This document shows positions 39,082-51,740 of a stretch of DNA of 64,000 bases, piece by piece; the first letter of the stretch is position 1; every line of letters starts with the position of its first letter. The stretch covers positions 418,157 to 482,156 of the IMG/VR virus record IMGVR_UViG_3300028558_000016; one strand, 5' to 3'. The position numbers and the translations under genes were made by a program. Under the pieces are notes generated by a model. The model worked only from the letters and a program-made list of their open reading frames with translations, was not told the DNA's origin and ran no database searches.

Positions 39082-39615
39082 CTACTTGTCCATCAAGGAC
39101 AGATTGTGCAACTCTATCTTAGCGATGAGCTTTTTAGAATAACCTGGATCTGTTGCATATCCAGCTTTAAGCAATCCCTCGGCCCAACCCTTATAGTCGC
39201 ATGGGTCCAGTTTGAAAAGGAAAGCGTATCGTTTTGCGCCTGCAAGGAAAACTGAATGGTCTCTGTAAGAATCGAGAACCGTCGGATATTTTCTAAAGCA
39301 TTCGTCTTTTAAATCGTCAGTGTATTTGTAGGTTTCTCCCCACCAATCTCCCTTGCATTTTATTCCAAAGTGGTTGTTGGCCTTTGTGGCAAGGTCGCTC
39401 TTTCCAGCAGCACTTTCTAACAATGCCTGAGCGAGAGTTATGCTTGCCGGAATTTTGAAGATCTTCATCTCAAGTATGGCAGCATCTCTGTATTTAGAAA
39501 TGTATTCGCTCTCGGTTTTAAATTCTATCTCAGCCGAAACGGCAGGTGAAAATTCTCTATAAATGAAGAAAATAACTATGAAAGAGAAGAATAATCCTAT
39601 TAATAAATTTTTCAT
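39082..39615 (-). CDS. Glucosaminidase (GH73/FlgJ-type muramidase), N-terminally anchored
   Basis: IPASITLAQALLES..SDLATKANNHFGIKC..GYATDPGY. Confidence 0.9.
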   Translation of the reverse strand: MKNLLIGLFFSFIVIFFIYREFSPAVSAEIEFKTESEYISKYRDAAILEMKIFKIPASITLAQALLESAAGKSDLATKANNHFGIKCKGDWWGETYKYTDDLKDECFRKYPTVLDSYRDHSVFLAGAKRYAFLFKLDPCDYKGWAEGLLKAGYATDPGYSKKLIAKIELHNLSLMDK

Positions 39616-39887
39616 TTTTTCTTGTAGAAATCAAATAAATCCTGCCACATGTGCTGGTTGGTTCCAGTCTTAATGTCTTCCAAATAGGCATCAAACATTC
39701 CTCTGTCCTGTCTGTATAAGTAATCACCGGCTAAACTCTTTCTTGCTCCTGTCGCTCTGCTGCTTGCGGTCTTGTTGTCTTTTCCATAAACCTCGTTCAT
39801 GAGTTTTCTCAATAAAGGAGCCGTGATAATCTTTTTAAAATTCTCAAGTTCTTGGTCAAATCCCTCGAATATTTTTAGGTATTTCAT
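39612..39887 (-). CDS. Motif-bearing small protein
   Basis: Starts MKYLKIFEGF. Confidence 0.7.
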   Translation of the reverse strand: MKYLKIFEGFDQELENFKKIITAPLLRKLMNEVYGKDNKTASSRATGARKSLAGDYLYRQDRGMFDAYLEDIKTGTNQHMWQDLFDFYKKK

Positions 39888-40237
39888 TTGATGTTATTCT
39901 TCTTGAGAACCGCTCTGTACATCTTGGCGATGTCATTGAGCTGAGGAATTCCGTCAAATTCCATTCTCGCCTGAGTCACTCGGTCTTTCTTAAGTTTATC
40001 CTTTCCAGAACCATCATATTCAGTGTATTCTATGAAAAGATTCTTGTTCTTGTAAACTACCGGCTTATATTTCATTGGAGCTTCCCATGTGCTCGATTTG
40101 TCGATTACTTCCAAAGGATCTCCATCAATATCAATCGCTTTAGCAATCAAAGCATTTACCTCTGCAACCTTCTTTTGAATTGCTGCGTCTGACATCCCCT
40201 CATTTAGGAAGTTCTCATATAGTTTTATGTGTTTCAT
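39884..40237 (-). CDS. Motif-bearing small protein
   Basis: Starts MKHIKLYENFLNE. Confidence 0.75.
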   Translation of the reverse strand: MKHIKLYENFLNEGMSDAAIQKKVAEVNALIAKAIDIDGDPLEVIDKSSTWEAPMKYKPVVYKNKNLFIEYTEYDGSGKDKLKKDRVTQARMEFDGIPQLNDIAKMYRAVLKKNNIK

Positions 40238-40842
40238 GTAATGGAAGCTTCTACGGTAGCTTTAATTATTTTTGGCATTTCGTCTTCAAAATTCTTTGCG
40301 AGATTAACGGTATCTATATTAGACAATTCGGCAATGACATCATGCGTTGACAAGAAAGAATCCAATAATTCATCAGAAAGCTTTCCAGCAACAATGCAAA
40401 TCATTACTGTTAGAGCAACGTTACCGAATGTTTTCTTTTGTTCTCCGTTCAACGAATCTATGAAATTCTTCAAAAGAGGAATCTTATTAGAAATTCTTAA
40501 AATCAATTTGAAAATTCCTGCCGTGTATATGTCTCCTTTGTGCTTCAACCATTCAGCCATTTTAAATGTGACTCTGCCAACCTTCTCGCTTGATTCCATT
40601 CCAATATATGTCAATGCAGCACTCGCGAGATGTGCTACTTTTCCAAGACTCAATGCTGCACCTATTGCTAATGTGGCCAAAACGGCTTCATTATTTCCGT
40701 CAAGCTTTGCTACAAGCACTCCGTCTTTTTTAATCTCTTTCTCGGTATCGGAAGCGATCTTATCGTCATCAACGATTTTTAATATCTCGTCGAAGATGTT
40801 TACGTCGATCTCAAATTCCTCAAACAGTTTTATGTGTCGCAT
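40234..40842 (-). CDS. Motif-bearing protein with hydrophobic helices
   Basis: Starts MRHIKLFEEF. Confidence 0.7.
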   Translation of the reverse strand: MRHIKLFEEFEIDVNIFDEILKIVDDDKIASDTEKEIKKDGVLVAKLDGNNEAVLATLAIGAALSLGKVAHLASAALTYIGMESSEKVGRVTFKMAEWLKHKGDIYTAGIFKLILRISNKIPLLKNFIDSLNGEQKKTFGNVALTVMICIVAGKLSDELLDSFLSTHDVIAELSNIDTVNLAKNFEDEMPKIIKATVEASIT

Positions 40843-41099
40843 TACTTTTCTTCTTTATCTGTTTCTTCCCATTCTCTTATGGTGCCTTCAGCATCCCATA
40901 GAGCACAACACATTCTCTCAGAAACCTTCTGGTCAACCTGAGGATGCTTGCACATCTTTTCTTTTAGATCTATGAATTTACAATTAGCACAGTTTGTGCC
41001 TTCAACATTTTCTGGAAGCGTGACAAGATCTGCCGCTTTTGCTCTATCGAGACGGCTTGGTTTGTCCTCTTCATTCTCGTAAATCTTTAAGTGTTTCAT
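40842..41099 (-). CDS. Motif-bearing HiPIP-like Cys protein
   Basis: Starts MKHLKIYENE; CANC-x8-C-x13-CCALW. Confidence 0.6.
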   Translation of the reverse strand: MKHLKIYENEEDKPSRLDRAKAADLVTLPENVEGTNCANCKFIDLKEKMCKHPQVDQKVSERMCCALWDAEGTIREWEETDKEEK

Positions 41100-41101
41100 T
41101 G

Positions 41102-41431
41102 TTATCCGAGTAATTTTTCAAGCTTTTTAACGAGCGTTTCTACGGTAGTTGAATATCCGTATAAACCATTAATGTCTGTTCCAAGACTTACTCCTCTGTT
41201 TGACATTGTAATTTTGAAATTGGTTCCAAGATAGGAACATTCAAAATAATCATTGGTAAAAAAGTCTATGTCATCATTTTTAATGACAGTCTTCTTTATT
41301 CTTATTCCAGCGGCCTTCAATTGAGTAGCAACAGCGCTCATGTATTCTTTCTTTGCTTCGCTGTAGATTCCACGTTTGACGTCCATAAGATTTCCAGCAG
41401 ATGCAGCCTCAAATAATTGTAAGTGTTTCAT
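41102..41431 (-). CDS. Motif-bearing small protein
   Basis: Starts MKHLQLFE. Confidence 0.7.
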   Translation of the reverse strand: MKHLQLFEAASAGNLMDVKRGIYSEAKKEYMSAVATQLKAAGIRIKKTVIKNDDIDFFTNDYFECSYLGTNFKITMSNRGVSLGTDINGLYGYSTTVETLVKKLEKLLG

Positions 41432-41432
41432 A

Positions 41433-41741
41433 TTATGCTTTAGCTCTTTTTATGTGCAAGTAAACAAACTCATCCACGTCTTCCAAGCTTCCCTTTACTT
41501 TCTTTGGAAATTTGTCAGTCACCAACTTATAAATACGTCTTGCTTCTGTCTTATCTTTATCACCTGGAGTTTCATCTCCTGTGTTACCATTTTCTCTTGT
41601 AGTCAATAGGATCTCATCATCGTCTTCCTCTTCAATGTCAAACCAACTATGTTCTTTCTTTACGAAATCACATATTTCTTTCCATTCAGTCGAGGTTGTT
41701 TCTTCGTTCAAGAATCCCTCAAATAGTTTAATGTGTTTCAT
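41433..41741 (-). CDS. Motif-bearing small acidic protein
   Basis: Starts MKHIKLFEGFLNE. Confidence 0.75.
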   Translation of the reverse strand: MKHIKLFEGFLNEETTSTEWKEICDFVKKEHSWFDIEEEDDDEILLTTRENGNTGDETPGDKDKTEARRIYKLVTDKFPKKVKGSLEDVDEFVYLHIKRAKA

Positions 41742-41743
41742 AT

Positions 41744-42139
41744 TTAAGATTTTTTAGTTTGGTCGCTGATGTCTCCAGGTTCTACGTCTGCTGGAATTTC
41801 TTCCACGATGTCAACCATAGTTCTGTTATACAAAGCTGCTTCCTTTTCTGAAAAAGAATCAGATAAAGCTTTGATGAAAGCCTTTGGAGTTTTTGGATTT
41901 AAGTTGATGCTTCTCTTATGTGAGTGTCCAATCTCAAGAGTGTAACCGAAATATCCGATCATGTCCTCAACTGTTCCCTTCACATATTTAATTCTTGTTC
42001 TTCCTTGACCCTTGTCGTAGGTTACTTTAACGATGAAAGCTTTTCCAGGTTTTGCTGGCTTTGCAGCTGATTCAGGATTAGGTGCATCAGTGAATTTATT
42101 CTCGTTGATAAATCCTTCAAACAATTTAATGTGTTTCAT
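41744..42139 (-). CDS. Motif-bearing small protein
   Basis: Starts MKHIKLFEGFINE. Confidence 0.75.
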   Translation of the reverse strand: MKHIKLFEGFINENKFTDAPNPESAAKPAKPGKAFIVKVTYDKGQGRTRIKYVKGTVEDMIGYFGYTLEIGHSHKRSINLNPKTPKAFIKALSDSFSEKEAALYNRTMVDIVEEIPADVEPGDISDQTKKS

Positions 42140-43124
42140 TCTTCTTGATTATTATTTCTCTGTTACCAGGTATAACGTTGTATTCTTTTCCTAAAACATC
42201 CTGTATCATTTTGATCTTGCTCGTCATGTCACCGGTTTGTTTAACCGTAAATCTTCCAGTAGCATCGAAGGTCTTGCTGTATGTTATAGGTTTCCATGTG
42301 CTGTCTGTTCCGAAATTATGTCCAAAGCTATCTCCAAGTTTTGCTCTTAATAATTTTAATACCTCTTTATATGGATGTGTTTCTGCCGTTTTTACTATTT
42401 TTACTGGAACTTTTAATCTCGATTTTATCTTCAGCATGTTAGTGTTCTCGCTCTCGTCTGGAGTGCTTAATGCTTCCAAATAAATTTTTTCTGTAAATTT
42501 CTTAGCATCTTCTATTTGGTCCTTTTCAAATCTTTTATTCATAACCATGTTTGGACCGCTGGTAGTTTGAAATGAAATCTTCCATTGGTCAAGACCGTCT
42601 CCTCCAAGATTTGAAGCTAAAAAACCAGAATTGTATAATGATGCAACAGTCTCTCCGTGAATGGTCAAATGCCAAGCTCTTAATTCATTGTCATGGCCTA
42701 TTGAAGATTTTCCATATTCTTTGGCATTCTGCTTCCAAGAAAATTTAACGGATTCTTCAGCTTCATCCAATTCCTCGTTGGATTTTCTGTCTCCCATTAT
42801 GGTGTAATAAGTTCCTTCACCGTTCATGCCTTCGCCAATAATGTCAAGCTTGTAATCGCTTTTTTGTAATGCTTCTATGGCATCCCATGCGTGACCTTCT
42901 GAATCGAAGTAGTCATCGGTTCCATCAAATCCTTCATAATCGTCATCAACGGTCAACTCGTGGATGTAAAGAGTCTCACCTGCTTTCAACCTCTCTTTTA
43001 CTTCTTTAACCTCTTCCTTATCGAAATATTCTTCATAATCAGAAAAACTCTGTGAAGTTAATTTTTCAAAATCTGGGCCGAGATCATTAGGATCGAAATT
43101 TTCAAATAGCTTAATGTGTTTCAT
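42126..43124 (-). CDS. Motif-bearing multidomain protein
   Basis: Starts MKHIKLFENF at the second Met; about 332 aa. Confidence 0.75.
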   Translation of the reverse strand: MKHIKLFENFDPNDLGPDFEKLTSQSFSDYEEYFDKEEVKEVKERLKAGETLYIHELTVDDDYEGFDGTDDYFDSEGHAWDAIEALQKSDYKLDIIGEGMNGEGTYYTIMGDRKSNEELDEAEESVKFSWKQNAKEYGKSSIGHDNELRAWHLTIHGETVASLYNSGFLASNLGGDGLDQWKISFQTTSGPNMVMNKRFEKDQIEDAKKFTEKIYLEALSTPDESENTNMLKIKSRLKVPVKIVKTAETHPYKEVLKLLRAKLGDSFGHNFGTDSTWKPITYSKTFDATGRFTVKQTGDMTSKIKMIQDVLGKEYNVIPGNREIIIKKNETH

Positions 43125-43126
43125 TA

Positions 43127-43387
43127 TTATGCTTTGCTTGCTTTTACCCATTCATCCCAAAAGTCTTCACCGTCCATTAAATAATAACCTATGAAGTCGG
43201 CTATCTTTTCTGGAAAATCTTCGATGCCTTTTATTTTTTTAGGATCAATTCCAAATCTTTTAGCGTTATCAAACACGAATTTACCCAAAGGCTCTTTCAT
43301 GTGTCCTCTGTTTCCAAGCTCTTTTGTAACTTTTTCTACAGTGTTTAATTCTGTATGGAAGTTCTCGAATAATTTAATGTGCTTCAT
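43127..43387 (-). CDS. Motif-bearing small protein
   Basis: Starts MKHIKLFENFHTE. Confidence 0.75.
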   Translation of the reverse strand: MKHIKLFENFHTELNTVEKVTKELGNRGHMKEPLGKFVFDNAKRFGIDPKKIKGIEDFPEKIADFIGYYLMDGEDFWDEWVKASKA

Positions 43388-43397
43388 AATTATAAAT

Positions 43398-43694
43398 TTA
43401 TTTTACCCAATCCTTAGATCTTCCGGCGTTGTCATCTCCTAAATTATTCTTGTATTGCTCGTGTTCTTTCTTGTCTTCAGGTTTAAGCAAAGGTTCAACC
43501 TCTTTATAAGTTGCATCCTGACAATCGTCAAGACTCTTTCCAATCTTATACTTGATCATGTAATTGGTTTCTCCAGCCATGTCACCAAACGGTTCTTCCC
43601 AAAAGAACACTTTCTTTCCGTTAGTTAAGTCGTAATAGTCTGGACCCATGTTTGAATCCTGATCGAAATCCTCAAATAATTTAATGTGATTCAT
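43398..43694 (-). CDS. Motif-bearing small protein
   Basis: Starts MNHIKLFEDF. Confidence 0.75.
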   Translation of the reverse strand: MNHIKLFEDFDQDSNMGPDYYDLTNGKKVFFWEEPFGDMAGETNYMIKYKIGKSLDDCQDATYKEVEPLLKPEDKKEHEQYKNNLGDDNAGRSKDWVK

Positions 43695-44104
43695 TATTTA
43701 AAACTTTTAGTTAAAAAATTCCATGCAGCGTTTGCTTCAGACTCTTTCTTAATATCTACTGATGCTATAGTTCCAGCCATTGGATCGTCGTATAGAATAG
43801 AAAATTTTCCTTCTTCATTAAAGAAGAATAGTTGTCTTTCTGACTTATCTTCGTTCTCAAGGAAATATCCATCAATAGAATTACCCTGTTTAATTTCCAT
43901 ATCAGATGCTTCAGAGACAGTCCATTTTCCTTTTTTTGATTTTACATCATTAGAAAAATCTTCTAAAAATTTCTTGAAGCTCTCATACTCTTCATCATAA
44001 GTAAGAACGTCCAATGCGAACTTTCCAACTTTTTCTATAGCGTTAGCAACGTCAACGAGGATCCCCTCGTTTGTAAATTGCTCAAATAGTTTAATGTGCT
44101 TCAT
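43694..44104 (-). CDS. Motif-bearing small protein
   Basis: Starts MKHIKLFEQFTNE. Confidence 0.75.
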   Translation of the reverse strand: MKHIKLFEQFTNEGILVDVANAIEKVGKFALDVLTYDEEYESFKKFLEDFSNDVKSKKGKWTVSEASDMEIKQGNSIDGYFLENEDKSERQLFFFNEEGKFSILYDDPMAGTIASVDIKKESEANAAWNFLTKSFK

Positions 44105-44286
44105 TATTTCTTATTAAGGATTTCTTCTATTTTTGTCCTCTGTTCAACAGACAAAGCAATTGGTTTGCCCATGTGAATGAACGAATAAACGGTTTCGCCT
44201 GAATTTTTACCTTCAGCTCTTTCTATTCTTATTTGTTCTGGGTTAAGATAGTTTGTATCTTTTTCGAAAATTTTAATGTGTTTCAT
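44104..44286 (-). CDS. Motif-bearing small protein
   Basis: Starts MKHIKIFE. Confidence 0.7.
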   Translation of the reverse strand: MKHIKIFEKDTNYLNPEQIRIERAEGKNSGETVYSFIHMGKPIALSVEQRTKIEEILNKK

Positions 44287-44287
44287 G

Positions 44288-44773
44288 TTACTTGTTCTTT
44301 AAATATGTATCAAGCAATTTCTTGCCGCTTTTCGTCCACTTCTGTTTGTATAGGTCTATGTCCTTCCAACGTTTCAGAGCTTCCTTAAATAATTCCATAC
44401 CAGTTCCCTTTGATTGTTCTTTTGGATCGACCATGACATTTATGTTTCCCTTGTCCTCGTATGGTGGAAAATCGAACGGGTAATGATTTAAAACACCTAT
44501 GAGCTTTCCTGATTTATTTCTATATAAAAGACAGTCAACCCATTTGTCTCCAACCTCACCTTTGAAATAACTTATTCCAGGTTCTCCTTTTTTATCATAT
44601 TGTCCAATCTGGTGATCCCAGAATTCCTTGAAGTTTTCAATGTCTGGAATCTCAATGACCTTCTTCTTTGAATTCGCTTTTTCCACGTTTGCTCTAACGT
44701 GAGCCAAATCATGAGACTTTGCGTATTGGTCGTCCTTGTTTTCAAATAACTTAAAAGACGTTAGGTGTTTCAT
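44288..44773 (-). CDS. Motif-bearing GNAT-family acetyltransferase
   Basis: Starts MKHLTSFKLFEN; acetyl-CoA motif A VMVDPKEQSKGTGMELF. Confidence 0.7.
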   Translation of the reverse strand: MKHLTSFKLFENKDDQYAKSHDLAHVRANVEKANSKKKVIEIPDIENFKEFWDHQIGQYDKKGEPGISYFKGEVGDKWVDCLLYRNKSGKLIGVLNHYPFDFPPYEDKGNINVMVDPKEQSKGTGMELFKEALKRWKDIDLYKQKWTKSGKKLLDTYLKNK

Positions 44774-44997
44774 AAAGATGCAATACTTTTTTTAAATGAA
44801 TCAACATCAGATTGAGACTCAGATATAAAATACTTTACGCCTGAATGTGAAGCTAATAAAAACATTTTGTGTTCTTTTGCCAGCTTGGTGATTTTCTTGT
44901 TAGTTTCTGAATCTTTCGACCATATCTTAACACCTAAAAAATCCTTTAAAAATTCAATATTTGAGTTTTCACCCTCAAAAAGCTTTATGTGTTTCAT
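44770..44997 (-). CDS. Motif-bearing small protein
   Basis: Starts MKHIKLFEGE at 44997, just after an AATATATA box. Confidence 0.7.
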   Translation of the reverse strand: MKHIKLFEGENSNIEFLKDFLGVKIWSKDSETNKKITKLAKEHKMFLLASHSGVKYFISESQSDVDSFKKSIASL

Positions 44998-45076
44998 TAT
45001 CGTATATATTTGGTTATAAAACAAAAACAGCAGGTTTCCCTGCTGTTCCGTTAATTTTATTGAAGTAAACCGAATA

Positions 45077-45646
45077 TTAGACGAAAGTGTCCTCCCAGTA
45101 GTCAGCTGCAAATGTCAGCGACAGAATCCAAACGTCAGTAGATTGGTAATCTAATTCCATTGGATTGATAGGAGTGATAGGCCACATTACCGGTAGTCTC
45201 ACTTTTCTGTGAATGTCTCCAGCTTTGTTGAATATTGTTATTAAACCTGAACCAACGTAATCCTTCTTTAATCCCATACCACCGGTATTTGGATTGTAGA
45301 TAAGGTCGCTCCATTGTCTCAAAGTCTTGAAGGTGTACATGCTGTTTGCATCGTTTAAGTTAACCTCGAAATCGATTGCTACATCGATCGTGGTTGTCTC
45401 TGGACGAGCACCTGCATACCTTCTCTTAGCGAACTTGTAGTATTGTTCCACAGTTCCAGGGTTCTTGTCTATCTCTAAACCAGATACCTTCTTAACGTGT
45501 TCCAACAATAGGTTCTGCCCGTTGTTTCCTGTTCCAGCATCAATTCCAGAGGGTGGAATCAATGTGACTTCGAACTGATTCAAAAATACAGGTTCGAAAT
45601 TTTTCATCGAAGCCTTACTATTCTTATAATGCGATAAACCTGCCAT
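45077..45646 (-). CDS. gp19: Tail tube protein (T4 gp19-like)
   Basis: EPVFLNQFEV..QYYKFAKRRYAG..LRQWSDLIYNPNTG..KKDYVG..WPITPINPMELDY..TFAADYW. Confidence 0.85.
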   Translation of the reverse strand: MAGLSHYKNSKASMKNFEPVFLNQFEVTLIPPSGIDAGTGNNGQNLLLEHVKKVSGLEIDKNPGTVEQYYKFAKRRYAGARPETTTIDVAIDFEVNLNDANSMYTFKTLRQWSDLIYNPNTGGMGLKKDYVGSGLITIFNKAGDIHRKVRLPVMWPITPINPMELDYQSTDVWILSLTFAADYWEDTFV

Positions 45647-45682
45647 TATTATAAAGTGTTATTTTTCTCTTTTATTATATAT

Positions 45683-45815
45683 CTAAACAGTTTCGAATTT
45701 CCACTTAAACCCATGAGCTGTCTTTCTTTTTGTTCCAGCACAACATTCACGTATGTTTCTGTGATTATAACCTGTTTCTCTATATATCTCGTATCTTGTA
45801 TATGACAGACTTCAT
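45683..45815 (-). pseudogene. Collapsed GIY-YIG/NUMOD1 homing endonuclease remnant
   Basis: MKSVIYKIRDI* followed in another frame by RETGYNHRNIRECCAGTKRKTAHGFKWKFETV*. Confidence 0.7.
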
Positions 45816-46067
45816 TTACTTTATATTCCCGTCTTTATCCCAAGTTTTTTCTCCAGCCAAATTATTATCAGGTTTTATTGTCTTTAGAATGTCTTGGTAT
45901 TTGATCTTGTATTGTTTAGCTATTTCTTTCGCTGCCTTTATAGTTCTTGTATTGGAACCTAAAACCTTTTTGTATAATTCCTTTTTCAAGGAATAAAAAT
46001 CTCTAAGGACTTCATCCATAACAACCTCTTCGTTCAGAAAATTTTCGTATAATTTAATATGTTTCAT
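45816..46067 (-). CDS. Motif-bearing small protein
   Basis: Starts MKHIKLYENFLNE. Confidence 0.75.
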   Translation of the reverse strand: MKHIKLYENFLNEEVVMDEVLRDFYSLKKELYKKVLGSNTRTIKAAKEIAKQYKIKYQDILKTIKPDNNLAGEKTWDKDGNIK

Positions 46068-46405
46068 TATTCTGTTCTTAAAGGCCAATTCTTCTTTATT
46101 CCTTCTATGTTAGCATTAAGCCATTCCTTTGCAGCCTCTAACGTCTCAGACTCATGTTTCAATGTAATCCACTTCCACTTGCAATTAGGATTGTCATCCG
46201 TTATGGTTGTCCCGTTCTTCATGACCATGAACCTAATCTTAAATGGCTTCTCTGGGTTAATACTTCCAACTTCAAAACCTTTAAGCTTAATATGATGACT
46301 TGAACTATAGAATGATCTGTAACGTCCGGTAGGTTTTTCAGTTTTGAACGTGAACTTTTCAACTGCTTCATTCAAGAAGTTTTCATATAGTTTTACGTGT
46401 TTCAT
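46067..46405 (-). CDS. Motif-bearing small protein
   Basis: Starts MKHVKLYENFLNE. Confidence 0.75.
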   Translation of the reverse strand: MKHVKLYENFLNEAVEKFTFKTEKPTGRYRSFYSSSHHIKLKGFEVGSINPEKPFKIRFMVMKNGTTITDDNPNCKWKWITLKHESETLEAAKEWLNANIEGIKKNWPLRTE

Positions 46406-46695
46406 TATTTAAAGTCTTTCAGCCAGCCTTTTTGCTCTGCATATTTTGCATGTTCTGTGTCAAGCTGTGTTGTATCTCCTTCAACATCGTTCACCATCAA
46501 TTGAAGCGCATCATCTATGGTTGCAGGAGTTATTTCTCCTCTTAACATTCCGAAGAAGAAATATTCTGTTCCAGCTTGCATGTCATCTAAAACTTTCTTT
46601 TGTTCTGGAGTTGCAACTGACATAACCTTCTTTGCCTTTTCTGTATTATCGGTTTTCTCGTTTAAGAAACCTTCAAACAATTTAATGTGCTTCAT
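46405..46695 (-). CDS. Motif-bearing small protein
   Basis: Starts MKHIKLFEGFLNE. Confidence 0.75.
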   Translation of the reverse strand: MKHIKLFEGFLNEKTDNTEKAKKVMSVATPEQKKVLDDMQAGTEYFFFGMLRGEITPATIDDALQLMVNDVEGDTTQLDTEHAKYAEQKGWLKDFK

Positions 46696-46702
46696 ATATT
46701 TA

Positions 46703-46999
46703 TTAATCTATTCTTAATGCACCTTGCATGTGGCCAAACAGGTAAACCCCGTAAGCTGATGTGAACTCAATCGTATAACCAACAAGATCTCCTCCTTTGG
46801 TGTTTCTAAATTGCTTGAATTCAGATACGTGTTTCTGGTCCTTCATTTTTGTAAGAATGTTCTCTACGTTGGAAACCTGATCCTGACCAAATGAAACATC
46901 CAGTGTTACTGGAACTTTTTCTTTTGGAAATCCATCTCTGAATTTTGTCGTATCATTTTCTGAAGCACCAAAATTTTCAAATAATTTTATGTTTTTCAT
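46703..46999 (-). CDS. Motif-bearing small protein
   Basis: Starts MKNIKLFENF. Confidence 0.75.
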   Translation of the reverse strand: MKNIKLFENFGASENDTTKFRDGFPKEKVPVTLDVSFGQDQVSNVENILTKMKDQKHVSEFKQFRNTKGGDLVGYTIEFTSAYGVYLFGHMQGALRID

Positions 47000-47280
47000 T
47001 ATTTAATTTTTTCTATTTGTGAAATAATATCCTTCTTCAAAGCGGCTTTTATTCCAGGAGACAAAGCATCTCCAGCTTCATCCAATGCAGCCTTTGCTTT
47101 CTTGGTGAATTCATCAAGAGCTTTAATAAGATCTTCCACGGCTTTCTTTGGTTTACCGTATTTGTAATCATCGTACGTCAACCAATGGCTCAATTCAGCT
47201 TCATTGATTCCGCTAATTTGTGCTAATCTTGCTTTTAATTCGCTGGTATCGAATTTTTCAAATTGTTTGATGTTCTTCAT
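46999..47280 (-). CDS. Motif-bearing small protein
   Basis: Starts MKNIKQFEKF. Confidence 0.75.
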   Translation of the reverse strand: MKNIKQFEKFDTSELKARLAQISGINEAELSHWLTYDDYKYGKPKKAVEDLIKALDEFTKKAKAALDEAGDALSPGIKAALKKDIISQIEKIK

Positions 47281-47573
47281 TACAATTTCTTTATTTCTTG
47301 TGCTAAGTCATCGAAGTTTGAATCTTCCAATGCGTATGAAGCAACATCTATAATCTTGTCGCCATCCCACTCACAAAACTTAGATACGATTATTCCAAGA
47401 ACCTGTTCGTCAGTTATCTTTCCAGACTTCTGTGCTTCAGGCGTGAATATCACACTCTTGCAATAAGCTATAATCGGAGTTAAATGTTCCTTGATATAAG
47501 CTTCTGTGTTCTCAGGAACCTTTGTGAAAGGAGCTGAAACCTCATTTAAGAATTCGTCGAATTTCTTTATCAT
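47280..47573 (-). CDS. Motif-bearing small protein
   Basis: Starts MIKKFDEFLNE. Confidence 0.75.
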   Translation of the reverse strand: MIKKFDEFLNEVSAPFTKVPENTEAYIKEHLTPIIAYCKSVIFTPEAQKSGKITDEQVLGIIVSKFCEWDGDKIIDVASYALEDSNFDDLAQEIKKL

Positions 47574-48097
47574 TATGCTGCTTGTTTAAATTTACCTGCT
47601 TTCATCTGTTCTTTCCATTCCTTCCATAAATCGAAATAAGATCTCTTGAAGTAATCCTTGCCATAATCCTTAAGGAGGTCAAGGTCCTTCAACATCTGCA
47701 ATTTCTCATTAGCAATCTTTGCCGTTGCAGCAAACATTACTCCTGAGCTTTGTCCTATCATCCATTCCCAATTTGCAATTCCTTTTGTGTAACCATACTT
47801 GTCAACACAAACGTAAGAAGCTTCATCTTGTAAATACAAATCAAAATACTTTGAACCTTCTGATGCCATCATGCCAACCGGTTTTGGAGCCGGAGCCATT
47901 CTTGGTCTTACCTCATCTACGTCTTTTATTTTGTCTGCATATCTTTTCTTTTCTGAATCATCTTCATTGACAGGTGCCTTTTCCGATTTTGCATCGAATA
48001 AATCTCCAAATGCATCATCATCCCAAGTTGTGTCAGGTTTAGTTTCTCCTGGATCTTGCTCGTTGAGGAAAGCCTCATATAGTTTTACGTGTTTCAT
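47573..48097 (-). CDS. Motif-bearing protein
   Basis: Starts MKHVKLYEAFLNE. Confidence 0.75.
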   Translation of the reverse strand: MKHVKLYEAFLNEQDPGETKPDTTWDDDAFGDLFDAKSEKAPVNEDDSEKKRYADKIKDVDEVRPRMAPAPKPVGMMASEGSKYFDLYLQDEASYVCVDKYGYTKGIANWEWMIGQSSGVMFAATAKIANEKLQMLKDLDLLKDYGKDYFKRSYFDLWKEWKEQMKAGKFKQAA

Positions 48098-48098
48098 A

Positions 48099-48434
48099 TT
48101 ATTCGTCTTTTTTCATTAATTGAGCTACCTGAGATCTTTCTACTTTCACTGTGTCTCCAATTTTCACATTGTGCACGACAGCAGGATCGTTATCAAGCTT
48201 TCCTTCAAAATGATCTGCGTCAACAACCTTCTCAATGTTAACCCACATCCATTCGACTTCCTCATCTTCTATGAAAGCAATCTTAACCCAATCTCCAATT
48301 TCTACAGGAGTCTTTGCGTTATCGTCTTGCCATTTTTTAAGTCTTGCATATCCTGCATCCTTATGAAGAATTCCAAGATTTTCAATTGGTTCTCTTTCTT
48401 CGTTAAATTCTCCGAATTGTTTAATGCGGTTCAT
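48099..48434 (-). CDS. Motif-bearing DUF2314 (YegJ-like) protein
   Basis: Starts MNRIKQFGEFNE; EWMWVNI..FEGKLDNDP..VKIGDTV. Confidence 0.7.
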   Translation of the reverse strand: MNRIKQFGEFNEEREPIENLGILHKDAGYARLKKWQDDNAKTPVEIGDWVKIAFIEDEEVEWMWVNIEKVVDADHFEGKLDNDPAVVHNVKIGDTVKVERSQVAQLMKKDE

Positions 48435-48435
48435 A

Positions 48436-48807
48436 TTATTTTCTTTGGTTTTTGAAATGATTATTAAACTTCATCTGTTGAATAAAATCTTGTCTCTTCA
48501 ATGATTTGAGAACCGCACCATACGCTTCCCACGCATCTCCAAGGTTAATGTGTTGTAAAGTGATATTATCTCCACCATTATCTTTGGTAACTCTGTATTG
48601 TGCACGTCCGTCACCCATAGGCATCTCCCAAATAAAACCAACGAGATTTTGTTCTGTTGCTTTATCAGAAGCTTCTTCCAATTCCTTTTCTACTTTGTTA
48701 TATTCAGCTTCATCTTTATCCCAACCTATGAGAGTTTCTTTAGGATACGATTCCTTTTCAAGCTTTGCTTCTCCCAAGAAGCTTTCAAATAATTTTAATC
48801 TTTTCAT
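48436..48807 (-). CDS. Motif-bearing small protein
   Basis: Starts MKRLKLFESFLGE. Confidence 0.75.
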   Translation of the reverse strand: MKRLKLFESFLGEAKLEKESYPKETLIGWDKDEAEYNKVEKELEEASDKATEQNLVGFIWEMPMGDGRAQYRVTKDNGGDNITLQHINLGDAWEAYGAVLKSLKRQDFIQQMKFNNHFKNQRK

Positions 48808-49415
48808 TTCTTAATTTCTTTTACTTTTGGAAGAGCTAATACTTTCTTTAAATCGTCTTCGGTGATATAGAATTTTCCTCTTGCTTCTATTCCTCCACCA
48901 AGTACAATATTCCCATCAGCATCGATCTTTGACCATGAATACATTGGAAAATGCATGTTCATTGCTTCAGTTTCTTCTTCAGTTAAATCTCTCTTTATAG
49001 GTTCTTTAGGAAGTGTTGGCTTGTCAAATTGCTTTACCAACTTCATTGCTTCAGTTGATTCGTTTACAAACGAAACCTCAGACTCATTTATTCTTACAGT
49101 CTTTTCAAAATCGTCAAAGCTTTTCATGTTGTATATATTTTGATTATTCTCGAACAATCCAGGATATAAATGAACCATGTCAGGCATTGGAAGGGGATCA
49201 ACCTCTTGCAATAAATTCAAGATGTCATCACCTATTTCCTTTGTAGGAAAACTAACTTCGTATGTGACATCCTTGCCACTTCTGCTTTCTTCCTTAACTG
49301 AAGCTCCAAGAACTTCAAGTCTCATTATGATATTGTCATCAAGATTATACATCGTGATTATTCCTGAATTAGCAACATTGTACTCGTTAAGGAAATCTTC
49401 AAATAGCTTTATCAT
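48804..49415 (-). CDS. Motif-bearing protein, apparent fusion of two cassettes
   Basis: Starts MIKLFEDFLNE; internal in-frame MKSFDDFE..INE at 49127 preceded by AATATATA. Confidence 0.7.
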   Translation of the reverse strand: MIKLFEDFLNEYNVANSGIITMYNLDDNIIMRLEVLGASVKEESRSGKDVTYEVSFPTKEIGDDILNLLQEVDPLPMPDMVHLYPGLFENNQNIYNMKSFDDFEKTVRINESEVSFVNESTEAMKLVKQFDKPTLPKEPIKRDLTEEETEAMNMHFPMYSWSKIDADGNIVLGGGIEARGKFYITEDDLKKVLALPKVKEIKK

Positions 49416-49460
49416 TTTTTAGGTTTGGTTTTAGGTTTTTTAGGAAAGCAACACATGTTA

Positions 49461-49763
49461 TTATTTGTTTATGTCTAATAGTTCTTTGATGATGTACTTC
49501 TTATTCTTCTCATACATTTTCTTTTCATCTTCGGTGAACGATGGAGCACACATTCTTTTGTACACATCTTCAATGACTTGTATCTTTGTCTTCTCTTCAA
49601 GAAACTTAAACAGCTTATTACCCTTCATTAACCCTGAAATATCATCGTTAATGTCTTTGATTAGTTTTTCTTTAGAATCTTCCACATCATTTTTTCCAAT
49701 CGCATATTTACTGTGCGTTGCATAATGAGCATCCAATCCCTCGAAAGTTTTTAGGTTTTTCAT
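49461..49763 (-). CDS. Motif-bearing small protein
   Basis: Starts MKNLKTFEG. Confidence 0.7.
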   Translation of the reverse strand: MKNLKTFEGLDAHYATHSKYAIGKNDVEDSKEKLIKDINDDISGLMKGNKLFKFLEEKTKIQVIEDVYKRMCAPSFTEDEKKMYEKNKKYIIKELLDINK

Positions 49764-50170
49764 TTGTTTTTCTTTTTTAGTTCATCTTTTATCTCGATCA
49801 CAAGTCTCTCTACGTTATTCAATTGCTTCTTTATTTGTCTTATCTCTTTCTCAGCCTTCATGTCAATATCCAAATCCTGCATGGATCTCTTTCTGTCTCG
49901 CTCCTCAACTCTTCTTTGGCTCATCATAATTATGGGAGCCTGTAATGCTGCCACTGTTGATAATATCAAATTCAGTAATATGAATGGATATGGATCAAAC
50001 GGCTTCCAAAGAAATTGAACAGAATTTATTATCATCCACAAGAACAAAAATCCAAGGAACGATAATATGAATGCCCAGCTTCCACCAAACTTCGATATTT
50101 TGTCAGAGACTCTATCTGCAAATGAAAGAATTTCTTCTTCGTTTCCTATTGTAGAATTTTGGTCTTTCAT
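49760..50170 (-). CDS. DUF1003-family membrane protein
   Basis: FGGSWAFI..FDPYPFILLNLILSTVAALQAPIIMMSQ. Confidence 0.9.
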   Translation of the reverse strand: MKDQNSTIGNEEEILSFADRVSDKISKFGGSWAFILSFLGFLFLWMIINSVQFLWKPFDPYPFILLNLILSTVAALQAPIIMMSQRRVEERDRKRSMQDLDIDMKAEKEIRQIKKQLNNVERLVIEIKDELKKKNK

Positions 50171-50385
50171 TAAATACCTTCTTTTATTGATTTAGCATCT
50201 TTTTTCGTGAGATATTGATTTATGTAAACAACCAATAAATCCGCCTTAGGATTAACACCATCAACTTCTTCTGCGTTTGATGTTAATTGTTCCAACAAAT
50301 TGTCTAATTCTTTTGTATGAAAATAAGCATCATCACCATGTGGACCTGCTTCATTTAATTCGTTAAATCCTTTTATGTTTTTCAT
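50170..50385 (-). CDS. Motif-bearing small protein
   Basis: Starts MKNIKGFNELNE. Confidence 0.7.
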   Translation of the reverse strand: MKNIKGFNELNEAGPHGDDAYFHTKELDNLLEQLTSNAEEVDGVNPKADLLVVYINQYLTKKDAKSIKEGI

Positions 50386-50386
50386 G

Positions 50387-50875
50387 TTAGTCAAGTCTTA
50401 TATCTATTATAGATGGAATTTGTTTGTGCAATGCACCTAAAGTTCCATTGTGTCCATACATCATACTGCTCGTGTTTCTGAACGGTTTAGGTAGATCTTC
50501 ATACGCATCTGACGGATTTAATTCATCATCCAATTTAATGAAAACAGTATTAACACCACCAGTTGATTCTCCGTCTTCGAATATATCGTATCCTTCAACA
50601 AAAATATCCAATTCTGGAATGTATCCTAAATAAGACTCTTGTCCATCAACTTCTCCTGAATCTCCTTTTAATTGGTTATCGGCAAATTCCATTAAAACTT
50701 TCATATAGATCTTATCAAAGAATTCATTTCCTCTGTATGTCAACTTATCATGGTAGTGATCGTTGATCACCTTTGTTGCTTCTGCGTGATTCATGCCTTT
50801 AGTTGCAGTAATCTCAAACTTTTCTTTTCCAACTTTTTCACCAAGGAACGACTCAAATAATTTAATATGTTTCAT
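50387..50875 (-). CDS. Motif-bearing protein
   Basis: Starts MKHIKLFESFLGE. Confidence 0.75.
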   Translation of the reverse strand: MKHIKLFESFLGEKVGKEKFEITATKGMNHAEATKVINDHYHDKLTYRGNEFFDKIYMKVLMEFADNQLKGDSGEVDGQESYLGYIPELDIFVEGYDIFEDGESTGGVNTVFIKLDDELNPSDAYEDLPKPFRNTSSMMYGHNGTLGALHKQIPSIIDIRLD

Positions 50876-50881
50876 AAGATA

Positions 50882-51193
50882 TTAGTTTTTTGGAATTCCA
50901 TAATCATTTTGAGCTGCCTCAATGTCAGATATAATAAGATCTTTTAATTGAGAAGCAATCTTCTGGTATTCTTCATGAAGCTTGATCATCTTATCAAACG
51001 CAGATCCATTATGTTTTCTTGCTTCGATGTATTCATCGAAGTCACCGCCAAATAATCCTTCTTCTTGTGCTATTTCAAATGCACCATAGAAATTATATTT
51101 CTCGCAAGCAGCATCAAAAAGTTTTAAACCTTCTAAGTTGATTTCGTTTTCGTCATTCTCATTGAGCTCATCAAATCTTTTTATATTCTTCAT
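50882..51193 (-). CDS. Motif-bearing small protein
   Basis: Starts MKNIKRFDELNE. Confidence 0.75.
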   Translation of the reverse strand: MKNIKRFDELNENDENEINLEGLKLFDAACEKYNFYGAFEIAQEEGLFGGDFDEYIEARKHNGSAFDKMIKLHEEYQKIASQLKDLIISDIEAAQNDYGIPKN

Positions 51194-51205
51194 GTTAGTT
51201 ATTGT

Positions 51206-51490
51206 TTATTTCAATTCAAATAATTTTACGAACTTTTTAAGTTCTCCTGAATCTCCTTCAGAATTTTTGCTTATTACAAGTACCATATTATCCGTAACGA
51301 ATTGTGCATCACAGTTTGCTTGTTCAGCAACGGATCTAATCCATTTTACTTTATTTGGAATGTTCTTATTGTTAGACAAGTAAAGAACTATAGCATTATC
51401 GTATCCTGAAATCTCTTCAGATGTTTGATAACTGTTTTGTGAACCTTCATTTAGTTCATTTAGTTCATTGAAGTTCTTAATGTTTTTCAT
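51206..51490 (-). CDS. Motif-bearing small protein
   Basis: Starts MKNIKNFNELNELNE. Confidence 0.75.
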   Translation of the reverse strand: MKNIKNFNELNELNEGSQNSYQTSEEISGYDNAIVLYLSNNKNIPNKVKWIRSVAEQANCDAQFVTDNMVLVISKNSEGDSGELKKFVKLFELK

Positions 51491-51740
51491 AGTTCTTCAT
51501 TTTATTTTCGTAATCATTGATTTGCTCCATTGACAACCATTCAGGCTTTTCTTTTAAAGCATTCCATATCTTTTTCATTTCAGCGATCTGTTTTTCAACA
51601 GACCCTTGATGTAAAACTCTTTCAGAACCTTTTCCATAATTCAAGAAATATTCACAATCTGATTGTAATCTATTAAGCATCATGTAATCAAATTCTGTAC
51701 CTTCGTTTAAAAATGCTTCGTATAATTTTATATTCTTCAT
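51477..51740 (-). CDS. Motif-bearing small protein
   Basis: Starts MKNIKLYEAFLNE. Confidence 0.75.
   Translation of the reverse strand: MKNIKLYEAFLNEGTEFDYMMLNRLQSDCEYFLNYGKGSERVLHQGSVEKQIAEMKKIWNALKEKPEWLSMEQINDYENKMKNYEKH

What the first reader, a model, noticed from the sequence alone, without database searches (positions are those of the whole stretch)
39612..51740. 12-kb array of 30 unrelated small genes sharing a capsid-targeting-like N-terminal peptide
Seen: 30 of the 32 ORFs in this interval start with variants of M-K-H-I-K-L-F/Y-E-x-F-(L/I)-N-E; the exceptions are the tail tube and DUF1003. The bodies after the motif are unrelated. Ten more such genes lie elsewhere (14698, 21618, 21894, 22511, 23000, 23284, 56473, 57203, 58261, 61121). 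Known: T4 internal proteins IPII/IPIII begin with a 10-aa capsid-targeting sequence (MKTYQEFIAE) that the gp21 prohead protease removes after (L/I)-X-E; they are injected with the DNA, and IPI blocks GmrSD restriction. Inference: this phage packages about 40 different cargo proteins into its head, a very large injected anti-defence/host-takeover repertoire.
Basis: partly seen in the sequence, partly recalled or inferred. Interest (0 to 1): 0.92.

Follow-up and report, generated by a model that had tools for sequence, protein, structure and literature searches.

The report
Capsid-targeting-like leader on many phage genes
A 482-kb uncultured T4-like phage carries dozens of unrelated small genes that all begin with the same 13-residue peptide, which closely resembles the tag phage T4 uses to load proteins into its head, so the phage may deliver an unusually large set of ready-made proteins with its DNA.

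Summary
**Observation: confirmed.** Thirty of 32 minus-strand genes in 39612-51740 start with variants of M-K-H-I-K-L-F-E-x-F-(L/I)-N-E. The bodies are unrelated. Nine more copies lie elsewhere in the window.

**Corrections**
- The gene reported at 14698 is not one.
- Only 12 of the 30 have the full L/I-x-E ending.

**What it is**
- The conservation is in the peptide, not the DNA, and the peptide is strictly N-terminal.
- It is phage-specific: over 120 viral stretches against 5 hits in 596 Gb of cellular genomes.
- The window is the end of a 482-kb T4-like phage contig, which holds at least about 54 such genes.

**Interpretation: largely supported in silico, but unproven**
- Leader residues 7-13 match the propeptides of Salmonella phage S16 internal head proteins (18 bits; null maximum 7.9).
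- Other leader-bearing contigs encode a gp21-family (Peptidase_S77) prohead protease, with leader genes beside it.
- Their capsid proteins start ...L-I-N-E-A.
- The same cargo bodies recur behind different N-terminal peptides that end in L/I-x-E.
- They also recur as domains of polyproteins joined by FINE-A-type linkers.

**Gaps**
- The source genome's own protease was not retrieved.
- No proteomic data exist.
- Expression timing is unknown.

**Verdict:** a new variant of a known kind, greatly expanded.

The parts
39612..39887 (-). leader gene, 91 aa (MKYLKIFEGFDQE; aromatic pair only)
   Evidence: 24.9 bits
39884..40237 (-). leader gene, 117 aa, full leader ending FLNE
   Evidence: 34.1 bits
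40234..40842 (-). leader gene, 202 aa (aromatic pair only); 34% orthologue in L124
40842..41099 (-). leader gene, 85 aa, weak leader, 5 Cys; 67% orthologue in L124
41102..41431 (-). leader gene, 109 aa, weak leader (MKHLQLFEAAS)
   Evidence: 20.0 bits
41433..41741 (-). leader gene, 102 aa, full leader FLNE; leader-bearing homologue in L083
41744..42139 (-). leader gene, 131 aa, full leader FINE; 81% orthologue in L124
42126..43124 (-). leader gene, 332 aa (largest), aromatic pair only; no Pfam
43127..43387 (-). leader gene, 86 aa, aromatic pair only
43398..43694 (-). leader gene, 98 aa, aromatic pair only
43694..44104 (-). leader gene, 136 aa (…FTNE)
44104..44286 (-). leader gene, 60 aa, weak leader
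44288..44773 (-). leader-variant gene, 161 aa, weak GNAT acetyltransferase match
   Evidence: (PF00583 E=0.0013, below cutoff)
44770..44997 (-). leader gene, 75 aa, weak leader; first gene of block 2
45024..45049 (-). terminator-like hairpin (11-bp stem + T run) just after the tube gene
45077..45646 (-). tail tube protein (exception inside the array)
45674..45682 (-). ATATATAA[AT] box 36 nt upstream of the tube gene (late-promoter-like)
45816..46067 (-). leader gene, 83 aa, full leader FLNE
46067..46405 (-). leader gene, 112 aa, full leader FLNE
46405..46695 (-). leader gene, 96 aa, full leader FLNE
46703..46999 (-). leader gene, 98 aa, aromatic pair only
46999..47280 (-). leader gene, 93 aa, aromatic pair only
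47280..47573 (-). short-form leader gene, 97 aa (MIKKFDEFLNE, 11 residues)
47573..48097 (-). leader gene, 174 aa, full leader FLNE
48099..48434 (-). leader gene, 111 aa, DUF2314 domain
   Evidence: PF10077 5e-7
48436..48807 (-). leader gene, 123 aa, full leader FLGE
48804..49415 (-). short-form leader gene, 203 aa (MIKLFEDFLNE); part of the body is homologous to a leaderless L123 protein
49461..49763 (-). leader gene, 100 aa (MKNLKTFEGLD)
49760..50170 (-). DUF1003 membrane protein (exception inside the array)
50170..50385 (-). leader gene, 71 aa, shifted ELNE
50387..50875 (-). leader gene, 162 aa, full leader FLGE
50882..51193 (-). leader gene, 103 aa, shifted ELNE
51206..51490 (-). leader gene, 94 aa, shifted ELNE
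51477..51740 (-). leader gene, 87 aa: leader (1-13) + 2-residue linker + complete LPD11 domain (16-81)
   Evidence: PF18824 2.8e-31; low-confidence model: helix 4-13, break, then domain helices
51771..51786 (-). terminator-like hairpin just after the sheath gene
51819..54527 (-). T4-like tail sheath (context)
54550..54558 (-). ATATATAA[AT]/TATAAATA box 31 nt upstream of the sheath gene
54597..56411 (-). terminase large subunit (context)
21618..21893 (+). leader gene outside the interval, 91 aa (MENLKTFESF)
21894..22511 (-). leader gene, 205 aa
22511..22735 (-). weak leader gene, 74 aa
   Evidence: 12.5 bits
23000..23284 (-). weak leader gene, 94 aa
   Evidence: 13.3 bits
23284..23745 (-). leader gene, 153 aa
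56473..57180 (+). leader gene, 235 aa, full leader FINE
57203..57478 (+). leader gene, 91 aa; its body is an internal domain of 775-1016-aa polyproteins in L006/L103/L099
57845..58261 (+). 138-aa gene with a different N-terminal module ending L-S-E, followed by an internal leader copy (GAA in place of ATG)
58261..58656 (+). leader gene, 131 aa, full leader FLNE; the homologous body follows L-S-E in L123 and I-N-E in L022
61121..61474 (+). short/variant leader gene, 117 aa (MIKKFNDFKLDE); leader-bearing orthologues in L122/L094

Best explanation
The 13-residue N-terminal peptide is a lineage-specific version of the T4-type capsid-targeting sequence (CTS), three residues longer than the T-even form.

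**Proposed mechanism**
1. Each small protein is made with the leader, which is predicted to be an amphipathic helix.
2. The helix docks the protein onto the scaffolding core of the assembling prohead. The aromatic residues at leader positions 7 and 10 correspond to T4 IPIII CTS positions 4 and 7, which determine targeting.
3. Where the leader ends in [ILV]-x-E, the gp21-family (Peptidase_S77) prohead protease cuts after the Glu and frees the body inside the head. Leader positions 11 and 13 correspond to T4 positions 8 and 10, which determine processing.
4. The freed proteins leave with the DNA at the next infection.

The two blocks around the tail tube gene are hyperplastic cassette loci in which unrelated bodies are swapped behind the same leader.

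**Shown**
- The motif, and that selection acts on the peptide at the N-terminus.
- Its restriction to phages.
- Its match to real T-even internal-protein propeptides.
- Its co-occurrence and adjacency with S77 proteases in related contigs.
- The shared [ILV]-N-E signature on several kinds of substrate.
- Exact domain boundaries at the Glu.

**Inferred:** docking, cleavage, packaging, ejection and any counter-defence role.
For: 1. **Peptide-level, N-terminal conservation.** Leu6 uses five codons. Upstream DNA is only A-rich. 34 of 36 hits in the window and 278 of 297 elsewhere directly follow a start codon.
3. **T4-like genome.** Sheath, tube and TerL are T4-like. 60 of 119 leader loci carry T4-type genes.
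4. **Match to S16 internal proteins.**
   - They were the only phage-database hits for a leader.
   - Their propeptides read M-K-T-Y-E-[DE]-F-I-N-E.
   - They score 17.7-18.1 bits against a null maximum of 7.9 over 2,013 N-termini.
5. **Protease link.**
   - S77 protease-scaffold fusions sit next to leader genes, between portal and MCP, in L081, L069 and L315.
   - Five contigs carry both the protease and leader genes.
6. **One signature on four substrate classes.** [ILV]-N-E then A/S/G occurs on leaders, on MCP N-termini (Q-L-I-N-E-A in all 47 L151-type MCPs), at the end of the protease domain (R-V-N-E-S) and in polyprotein linkers.
7. **Boundary at the Glu.**
   - The body of 58261 begins right after the Glu behind three different N-terminal peptides.
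   - The body of 57203 is a polyprotein domain preceded by FINE-A, VNE-A or LDE-A.
8. **Lineage-restricted.** There are 0 leader genes in 1.04 Mb around classical gp21 genes and 0 in MaF61.
9. **Hyperplastic locus.** Gene content differs between relatives whose sheath and tube are about 90% identical.
10. **Cargo-like bodies.** An LPD11 domain in the window. Acb1, GNAT and lysozyme domains elsewhere.
11. **Published T4 rules.** See PMC9026906 and PMC3012670.
12. **Amphipathic helix.** The hydrophobic moment is 0.53-0.56, similar to the S16 propeptide.
Against: - The source contig's own protease, scaffold and MCP were not retrieved.
- Only 12 of 30 leaders in the interval (14 of 40 in the window) have the full processing signature.
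- Both blocks follow terminator-like hairpins and lack the ATATATAA[AT] box found before the sheath and tube genes, so late expression is not shown.
- In other contigs, leader genes mostly neighbour replication genes.
- Most bodies are acidic, whereas T4 internal proteins are described as basic (PMC9026906).
- MaF61 and the LR756500 head region encode S77 proteases but have no leader genes.
- The window's short-form leader found nothing in the phage database.
- No cultured phage carries the leader, and no proteomic data exist.
- The structure model is low-confidence (pLDDT 61).
Confidence: 0.66

Rival explanations
1. The leader is a propeptide recognised by the prohead or another phage protease, but it serves timed activation or inactivation of cytoplasmic proteins (a zymogen-like switch at late times). 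The proteins would not be loaded into the capsid.
For: - The [ILV]-N-E signature is shared with known protease substrates.
- Many leader genes lie in replication regions.
- The bodies are acidic, unlike T4 internal proteins.
Against: - In T4 the protease acts inside the prohead core, on proteins already assembled there (PMC9026906).
- The best-conserved leader positions are those that determine targeting in T4, not the cleavage positions.
- Over half of the window's leaders lack the cleavage site.
Confidence: 0.1
2. The leader is a docking tag for some other phage-specific partner unrelated to the head, such as a chaperone, a degradation adaptor, a membrane or a replication compartment.
For: - It is an amphipathic helix.
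- It is phage-specific.
- It sits on enzymes such as Acb1, GNAT and cytidylyltransferase.
Against: - This does not explain the specific match to T-even internal-protein propeptides.
- It does not explain adjacency to portal, protease and MCP.
- It does not explain polyprotein linkers or domain boundaries at the Glu.
Confidence: 0.12
3. The conserved first codons act on translation. In a host without Shine-Dalgarno sequences they would aid initiation or coupling (A-rich, unstructured start, reinitiation at overlapping stop-start junctions). The peptide itself would be incidental.
For: - Upstream regions are A-rich.
- Genes overlap by 1-4 nt.
- AAA, CAC and CTA codons are enriched in the leader.
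Against: - Amino acids are conserved through synonymous changes.
- The motif is nearly absent from 596 Gb of cellular genomes, including Bacteroidota.
- It is absent from MaF61, which infects Flavobacterium.
- Internal leader-like linkers occur in polyproteins.
Confidence: 0.05
4. The leader is mainly a recombination handle or a relic of common descent. Short shared 5' sequences would let cassettes shuffle, with little function for the peptide.
For: - The locus is hyperplastic.
- Subgroups of leaders share unusual codons, such as Leu CTA in 14 of 55 leader Leu codons against 63 of 1411 in the background.
- There are fusion and split events at the leader.
Against: - The DNA is too diverged for homologous recombination in most pairs, yet the peptide is kept across contigs with 24-47% GC.
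- Recombination may well use the leader, but that does not explain purifying selection on the residues.
Confidence: 0.05

Closest known systems
T4/T-even internal proteins (IPI, IPII, IPIII and relatives, e.g. Salmonella phage S16 Ip4 and gp70.1) with their capsid targeting sequence
   Same: - A short N-terminal propeptide on otherwise unrelated small proteins.
- Aromatic residues spaced i and i+3, followed by I/L-x-E.
- A gp21-family protease in related genomes.
- A hypervariable locus.
- S16 propeptides score 18 bits on the leader profile (PMC9026906; PMC3012670).
   Different: - The leader has 13 residues instead of 10, with an extra K-H-I-K-L-type N-terminal turn.
- The protease is fused to the scaffold.
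- There are about 54 or more genes per genome, against about 3-4.
- The bodies are mostly acidic.
- Many copies lack the cleavage tripeptide.
- The hosts are probably Bacteroidota.
- Nothing has been tested experimentally.
Polyvalent proteins of phages and conjugative elements (Iyer et al. 2017, PMC5512222)
   Same: - They are predicted to be delivered with the DNA.
- One window gene is a stand-alone LPD11 domain.
- Related phages string such domains into 775-1016-aa polyproteins.
   Different: - The window's genes are single-domain, each with its own leader.
- The linkers in the related polyproteins look like prohead-protease sites. As far as I read that paper, this is not described as a feature of polyvalent proteins.
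Propeptide-bearing ejection and inner-body proteins of giant phages phiKZ and SPN3US
   Same: - Many head-internal proteins are cut after Glu by a diverged gp21 homologue and are ejected into the host (PMC9026906, PMC7411985).
- These are large genomes with dozens of head proteins.
   Different: - Those phages use a different short motif before the Glu (S/A/G-x-E, from my own knowledge).
- Their propeptides are long and not uniform.
- They have no common 13-residue leader.
- They belong to a different phage lineage.
Phage P1 Dar anti-restriction proteins packaged in the head
   Same: Counter-defence proteins are loaded into the capsid and injected (PMC9024508, PMC12810830; abstracts only).
   Different: From my own knowledge, loading there depends on protein-protein hierarchies (Hdf, DarA), not on a common cleavable leader.

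Membership tests
T4-type capsid-targeting sequence (CTS) / internal-protein system | Short (10-19 residue) propeptide at the extreme N-terminus | tested here: met
   The leader has 13 residues (11 in two genes). 34 of 36 window hits and 278 of 297 hits elsewhere directly follow a start codon.
T4-type capsid-targeting sequence (CTS) / internal-protein system | Targeting determinants at CTS residues 4 and 7 (aromatic, spaced by 3) | tested here: met
   Position 7 is F or Y in 36 of 37 window leaders and position 10 is F in 25 of 37. In other loci the figures are 194 of 195 and 183 of 195. 33 of 40 window genes keep the aromatic pair.
T4-type capsid-targeting sequence (CTS) / internal-protein system | Processing determinants: L/I at residue 8 and Glu at residue 10 (gp21 site L/I-X-E) | tested here: inconclusive
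   Present in register in 12 of 30 interval genes (14 of 40 in the window) and in 140 of 230 genes elsewhere. Three more are shifted by one residue. In T4, loss of the Glu blocks processing but not targeting (PMC9026906).
T4-type capsid-targeting sequence (CTS) / internal-protein system | Genome encodes a gp21-family (Peptidase_S77) prohead protease and a scaffold core | tested here: inconclusive
   Not retrieved for the 482-kb source contig. Met on five other leader-bearing contigs.
T4-type capsid-targeting sequence (CTS) / internal-protein system | Bodies unrelated to each other and sharing only the propeptide; locus hypervariable between relatives | tested here: met
   Best pairwise E-value 0.03. 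Gene content is replaced between relatives with about 90% identical sheath and tube.
T4-type capsid-targeting sequence (CTS) / internal-protein system | Sequence similarity to bona fide T-even CTSs | tested here: met
   S16 propeptides were the only database hits. They score 17.7-18.1 bits against a null maximum of 7.9.
T4-type capsid-targeting sequence (CTS) / internal-protein system | Proteins present in virions with mature N-termini after the Glu; peptide sufficient to package a foreign protein; ejection with the DNA | not testable with these tools
   No cultured phage carries the leader. No paper contains the peptide string.
Polyvalent proteins (PMC5512222) | Two to fifteen disparate domains in one polypeptide | tested here: not met
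   The window's genes have one small body each. The window has no polyprotein-like ORF. Related loci do have them.
Polyvalent proteins (PMC5512222) | Contains polyvalent-protein-associated (LPD) domains | tested here: met
   LPD11, complete domain, in gene 51477-51740 only.
phiKZ/SPN3US-type head ejection proteins | Cleavage after Glu in that group's own motif; homology to inner-body or ejection protein families | not tested
   The motif here is [ILV]-N-E. No PHROG or Pfam hit to such families appeared in the scans run.

The most novel reading that the evidence does not exclude
An uncultured 482-kb T4-like phage, and in smaller numbers hundreds of related marine and freshwater phages, use an extended CTS to load more than 50 different, rapidly exchanged proteins into the capsid. 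These would include pre-made counter-defence enzymes such as Acb1-type nucleases. The same cargo domains would alternatively be delivered as polyproteins that the prohead protease cuts at FINE-A-type linkers. The leader would then be a sequence tag for listing the injected proteome of uncultured phages directly from metagenomes.
Probability: 0.4. Interest if true: 0.85.

Novelty: new variant of a known kind. Interest (0 to 1): 0.72.

Why it matters
**If the leader really directs packaging**
- It marks, by sequence alone, which of the many orphan genes of huge and T4-like environmental phages encode virion-delivered proteins. That group is where first-minute counter-defence and host-takeover functions are expected.
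- It would raise the known scale of such cargo from a handful per phage (T4) to more than 50.
- It would show two interchangeable architectures for the same cargo: single genes with a leader, and polyproteins with protease-site linkers.
- It would provide a short portable tag for loading proteins into capsids of phages of Bacteroidota-type hosts.

**It is also directly testable**
- by virion or metaproteome mass spectrometry for N-termini that begin after the Glu;
- by cleavage assays with the S77 protease domain.

Tried and rejected
**Searches that led nowhere**
- **N-terminal region search.** The search for homologous proteins on the first 40 residues returned only the query, because word-based candidate selection fails on a 13-residue motif.
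- **Source genome's head genes.** Five routes all missed contig 3300028558_000016:
  - MaF61 MCP search;
  - Gp23 alignment scan;
  - three S77 alignment scans with different lead sequences.
- **Contig walking.** The look-up returned a 38-kb Logan contig that extends only 3.8 kb.
- **Near-DNA search.** The array had no match against phage records.
- **Window short-form leader.** tblastn of the 20 residues against phages found nothing.
- **L099 polyprotein.** No match against phages.
- **Literature.** No paper contains the peptide string.

**Ideas rejected**
- **Vertex protein.** The gene after the MCP with the intermediate leader is not a detectable Gp23 paralogue.
- **Sigma-70 promoters.** The scan was no better than shuffles, 48 against 53.
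- **Bacteroidota -7 box.** TAnnTTTG gave no pattern.
- **General host translation feature.** Rejected, because the motif is nearly absent from cellular genomes.
- **DNA-level repeat or regulatory element.** Rejected, because upstream DNA and third codon positions are not conserved.

Full report
**1. The observation**

Window 39612-51740 holds 32 minus-strand genes. They are packed almost without gaps, with junctions mostly -4, -1 or +1 nt.

- the tail tube, 45077-45646 (phrog_32623 1e-29; tail-tube phrog_45 1.3e-8);
- a DUF1003 protein, 49760-50170 (Pfam 1.3e-35).

The other 30 begin with variants of M-K-H-I-K-L-F-E-x-F-(L/I)-N-E.
- A 13-position profile finds 34 hits of at least 14 bits in the window and none in 20 shuffles.
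- With the first 14 residues removed, no pair among 40 such proteins gives a BLASTP E-value below 0.03. The bodies are unrelated.
The site at 14698 is not.
- The core, positions 1-10, is better conserved than the ending.
- In the interval, 12 leaders have the complete aromatic-x-x-aromatic-[ILVM]-x-E form. Fourteen keep only the aromatic pair and 4 are weak.

**2. The signal is in the peptide, at the N-terminus, and is specific to phages**

- DNA upstream of the start codons is only A-rich.
- Conserved residues vary synonymously. Leu6 uses five codons, so its first codon position carries 0.23 bits.
- The 12 residues after the Met follow an ATG in 34 of 36 cases in the window. In other loci they follow a start codon in 278 of 297 cases.
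It matched only 5 contigs in 596 Gb of bacterial and archaeal genomes. All five are MAG contigs, mostly Bacteroidota.

This excludes a general host translation signal.

No paper in the searchable library contains the peptide string. No record among 50,697 phage genomes carries the canonical form.

**3. The genome**

- The window is the last 64 kb of IMG/VR contig 3300028558_000016, which is 482,156 bp long.
- The sheath, tube and large terminase are T4-like.
- Two other pieces of the same contig (L033, L043) hold about 14 more leader genes. The genome therefore has at least about 54, found in roughly 84 kb sampled.
- Half of all leader-bearing loci (60 of 119) contain recognisable T4-type genes. 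These include polymerase, primase-helicase, portal, MCP, sheath and gp6-like wedge.

**4. The link to the T4 capsid-targeting sequence**

A tblastn of a 20-residue leader against all phage records returned only one locus type. That locus is the N-terminus of 'Ip4 / internal virion protein' in T4-like Salmonella phage S16 and its relatives, at E of about 2.

Read from the DNA, S16's two internal head proteins begin M-K-T-Y-E-[D/E]-F-I-N-E. Scored with a profile of leader residues 7-13 built from 195 non-window proteins, they reach 17.7 and 18.1 bits. The maximum over 2,013 N-termini from phage loci without the leader is 7.9 bits.

The review PMC9026906 states the T4 rules:
- gp21 cuts after Glu in L/I-X-E.
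- Internal-protein propeptides are 10-19 residues long.
- The first ten residues of IPIII are enough for targeting.
- Residues 4 and 7 mainly determine targeting, and residues 8 and 10 determine processing.
- Asp at position 10 blocks processing but not targeting.

The alignment puts leader F/Y7, F10, [ILV]11 and E13 on exactly those four positions. The window's leaders keep the targeting pair almost always and the processing pair only about half the time.

The leader and the S16 propeptide have similar helical hydrophobic moments, 0.53-0.56.

**5. The protease and its other substrates**

Other leader-bearing phages encode a gp21-family protease fused to a long scaffold-like tail (Pfam Peptidase_S77 5e-13; PHROG head maturation protease 4e-38).

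Leader genes lie directly beside it:
- In L081 the order is portal, leader gene, protease-scaffold, then three leader genes.
- In L069 two leader genes precede the protease-scaffold and MCP.
- In L315 a leader gene ends 77 nt before the protease.
- Five contigs carry both leader genes and the protease.

In these lineages the same signature appears elsewhere:
- The protease domain ends R-V-N-E-S.
- The MCP starts M-Y-A-N-Q-L-I-N-E-A or M-A-N-L-I-N-E-[AS].
- The protease has an L-I-L-E site near its N-terminus, like the LIE-9 site of T4 gp21.

Leader use is restricted to certain lineages:
- 77 loci (1.04 Mb) around classical stand-alone gp21 genes have none.
- MaF61 (150 kb read) and its relatives have none.
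- The protease-fusion lineages have 1.6-2.2 per 100 kb near the head module.
- The window has about 62 per 100 kb.

**6. Junction evidence**

The body of gene 58261 follows the leader ...F-L-N-E in the window. In L123 the homologous body follows a different 56-residue N-terminal module ending L-S-E. In L022 it follows a 7-residue peptide ending I-N-E. In each case the homology starts at the residue after the Glu.

The body of gene 57203 is an internal domain of 775-1016-aa proteins in L006, L103 and L099. There it is preceded by V-N-E-A, L-D-E-A or F-I-N-E-A.
- Those proteins have 9-22 such sites.
- The sites form linkers every 70-80 residues, often as doublets of the type I-K-E-S-F-I-N-E-A.
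- The L103 protein begins M-N-F-N-Q-F-L-N-E-A.
- ORFs with several such linkers occur only in leader-bearing loci.

A 349-aa leader protein in L003 equals the C-terminal 330 residues of four larger proteins. Those proteins keep an internal leader remnant at the join.

Window gene 57845-58261 contains an internal leader copy with GAA where the ATG would be.

Leader-tagged modules and polyproteins are therefore interconvertible, and the Glu marks the module boundary.

**7. What the cargo is**

Of the window's 39 proteins scanned, only three have a domain match:
- a complete LPD11 domain at residues 16-81 of gene 51477-51740, directly after the leader (2.8e-31);
- a DUF2314 domain;
- a weak GNAT match.

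LPD11 is one of the domains associated with polyvalent proteins. These are predicted to be injected with phage or plasmid DNA (PMC5512222).

Among 148 leader proteins from other loci, about 120 have no Pfam match. The rest include anti-CBASS Acb1 / 2H phosphoesterase (6), GNAT (3), cytidylyltransferase-like (3), LRR (3), lysozyme (2) and ATP-grasp (2). None is a core replication or structural protein.

**8. Dynamics**

- In L124 the sheath is 90% and the tube 92% identical to the window's. Its sheath-tube gap holds 4 small ORFs instead of 16, and only three post-tube genes are orthologous.
- In L123/L005 and L125 almost none are orthologous.
- Only 9 of the 40 bodies have any homologue in about 2.8 Mb of related loci.

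This matches what PMC3012670 describes for T-even phages: internal proteins that are diverse defence proteins sharing only a CTS.

**9. What remains open**

- The source genome's own protease, scaffold and MCP could not be fetched.
- Both blocks start after terminator-like hairpins. They lack the ATATATAA[AT] box that lies 31-56 nt upstream of the sheath gene, the tube gene and two other genes. Their expression timing is therefore unknown.
- In other contigs, leader genes mostly neighbour replication genes.
- Most bodies are acidic.
- A single-sequence structure model of the LPD11 protein is low-confidence (pLDDT 61). It shows a helix at residues 4-13, a break, then the domain helices.
- Packaging, cleavage and ejection are inferences.
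- Capacity is not an obstacle. T4 holds about 1,100 internal-protein molecules in a 170-kb head (PMC9026906). A 482-kb head could plausibly hold tens of copies each of 50 or more species. This last point is my own inference.

**10. Verdict**

The kind of system is known from T-even phages. Four things are new:
- the extended 13-residue leader;
- its wide distribution in uncultured T4-like phages that have protease-scaffold fusions;
- the scale, about 54 or more genes in one genome and 30 within 12 kb;
- the equivalence with linker-separated polyproteins.

Noticed in passing
L099:4360-7407 (+), L006 (805-aa ORF), L103:9810-12134 (-); also L049, L083, L108, L024, L007, L054, L035, L034: These are polyprotein-like ORFs of 536-1016 aa. 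Their ~70-80-residue domains are separated by periodic linkers such as I-K-E-S-F-I-N-E-A, with 9-22 [ILV]-x-E then A/S/G sites per protein. They occur only in leader-bearing loci. The L099 protein has no match in 50,697 phage records.
   Followed up: partly
window 57508-57810 (+) and 57845-58261 (+): These two paralogous genes share a second kind of N-terminal module (M-N-[TI]-F-D-..., about 56 residues ending L-S-E). In L123 that module is fused directly to the body that the window encodes behind a leader at 58261. The second gene also contains an internal leader copy with GAA in place of ATG.
   Followed up: partly
window 54550-54558, 45674-45682, 39049-39057, 24292-24300 (all minus strand): ATATATAA[AT] occurs only 5 times in 64 kb, fewer than in shuffles. 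Four of those lie 31-56 nt upstream of same-strand gene starts: sheath, tube, the gene starting at 39001 and the gene starting at 24258. This is a candidate T4-like late promoter box.
   Followed up: partly
L151:13833-14945 (+), L155:13782-14855 (+): A conserved gene directly after the MCP begins M-x-K-L-K-T-Y-x-E-F-[VI]-N-E. This is intermediate between the S16 propeptide and the window's leader. It is not a detectable Gp23 paralogue.
   Followed up: partly
window leader codons (all 40 genes): Leu CTA makes up 14 of 55 leader Leu codons, against 63 of 1411 in gene bodies. His CAC is also enriched (odds ratio 4, p=0.006). This suggests that some leaders share recent DNA ancestry, or that early codons are under translational selection.
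   Followed up: no
window 1407-2363 (+) and 2360-4099 (+); 144-1349 (+); L230:671-1402: There is a MoxR-type AAA ATPase next to a VWA-like protein. The window also has tRNA-synthetase-like ORFs (weak PF00750 in the window, PF00579 just upstream of it), tRNA-Arg(TCT) at 4389-4463 and tRNA-Met at 6831-6905.
   Followed up: no
window 29815-30843 (-): A phage-encoded RNA polymerase sigma-factor-like protein (phrog_1740, 8.5e-20). It may drive the phage's own promoter class.
   Followed up: no
window 49760-50170 (-): A DUF1003 membrane protein sits in the middle of leader block 1, overlapping its neighbours by 1-4 nt. It is the only non-leader, non-structural gene in the array.
   Followed up: no
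L142:2983-3483 (Salmonella phage S16 gp71): The annotated start of the S16 internal virion protein lies 8 codons upstream of an in-frame ATG, and the propeptide M-K-T-Y-E-D-F-I-N-E begins at that ATG. The annotated start is probably too far upstream.
   Followed up: no
L311 (LR756500.1 205064-246671): This 462-kb uncultured phage shares the head-module layout: portal, a 632-aa S77 protease-scaffold fusion, and an MCP starting M-I-K-L-I-N-E-A. It shows no leader genes in 41 kb, so leader use varies within the head lineage.
   Followed up: partly
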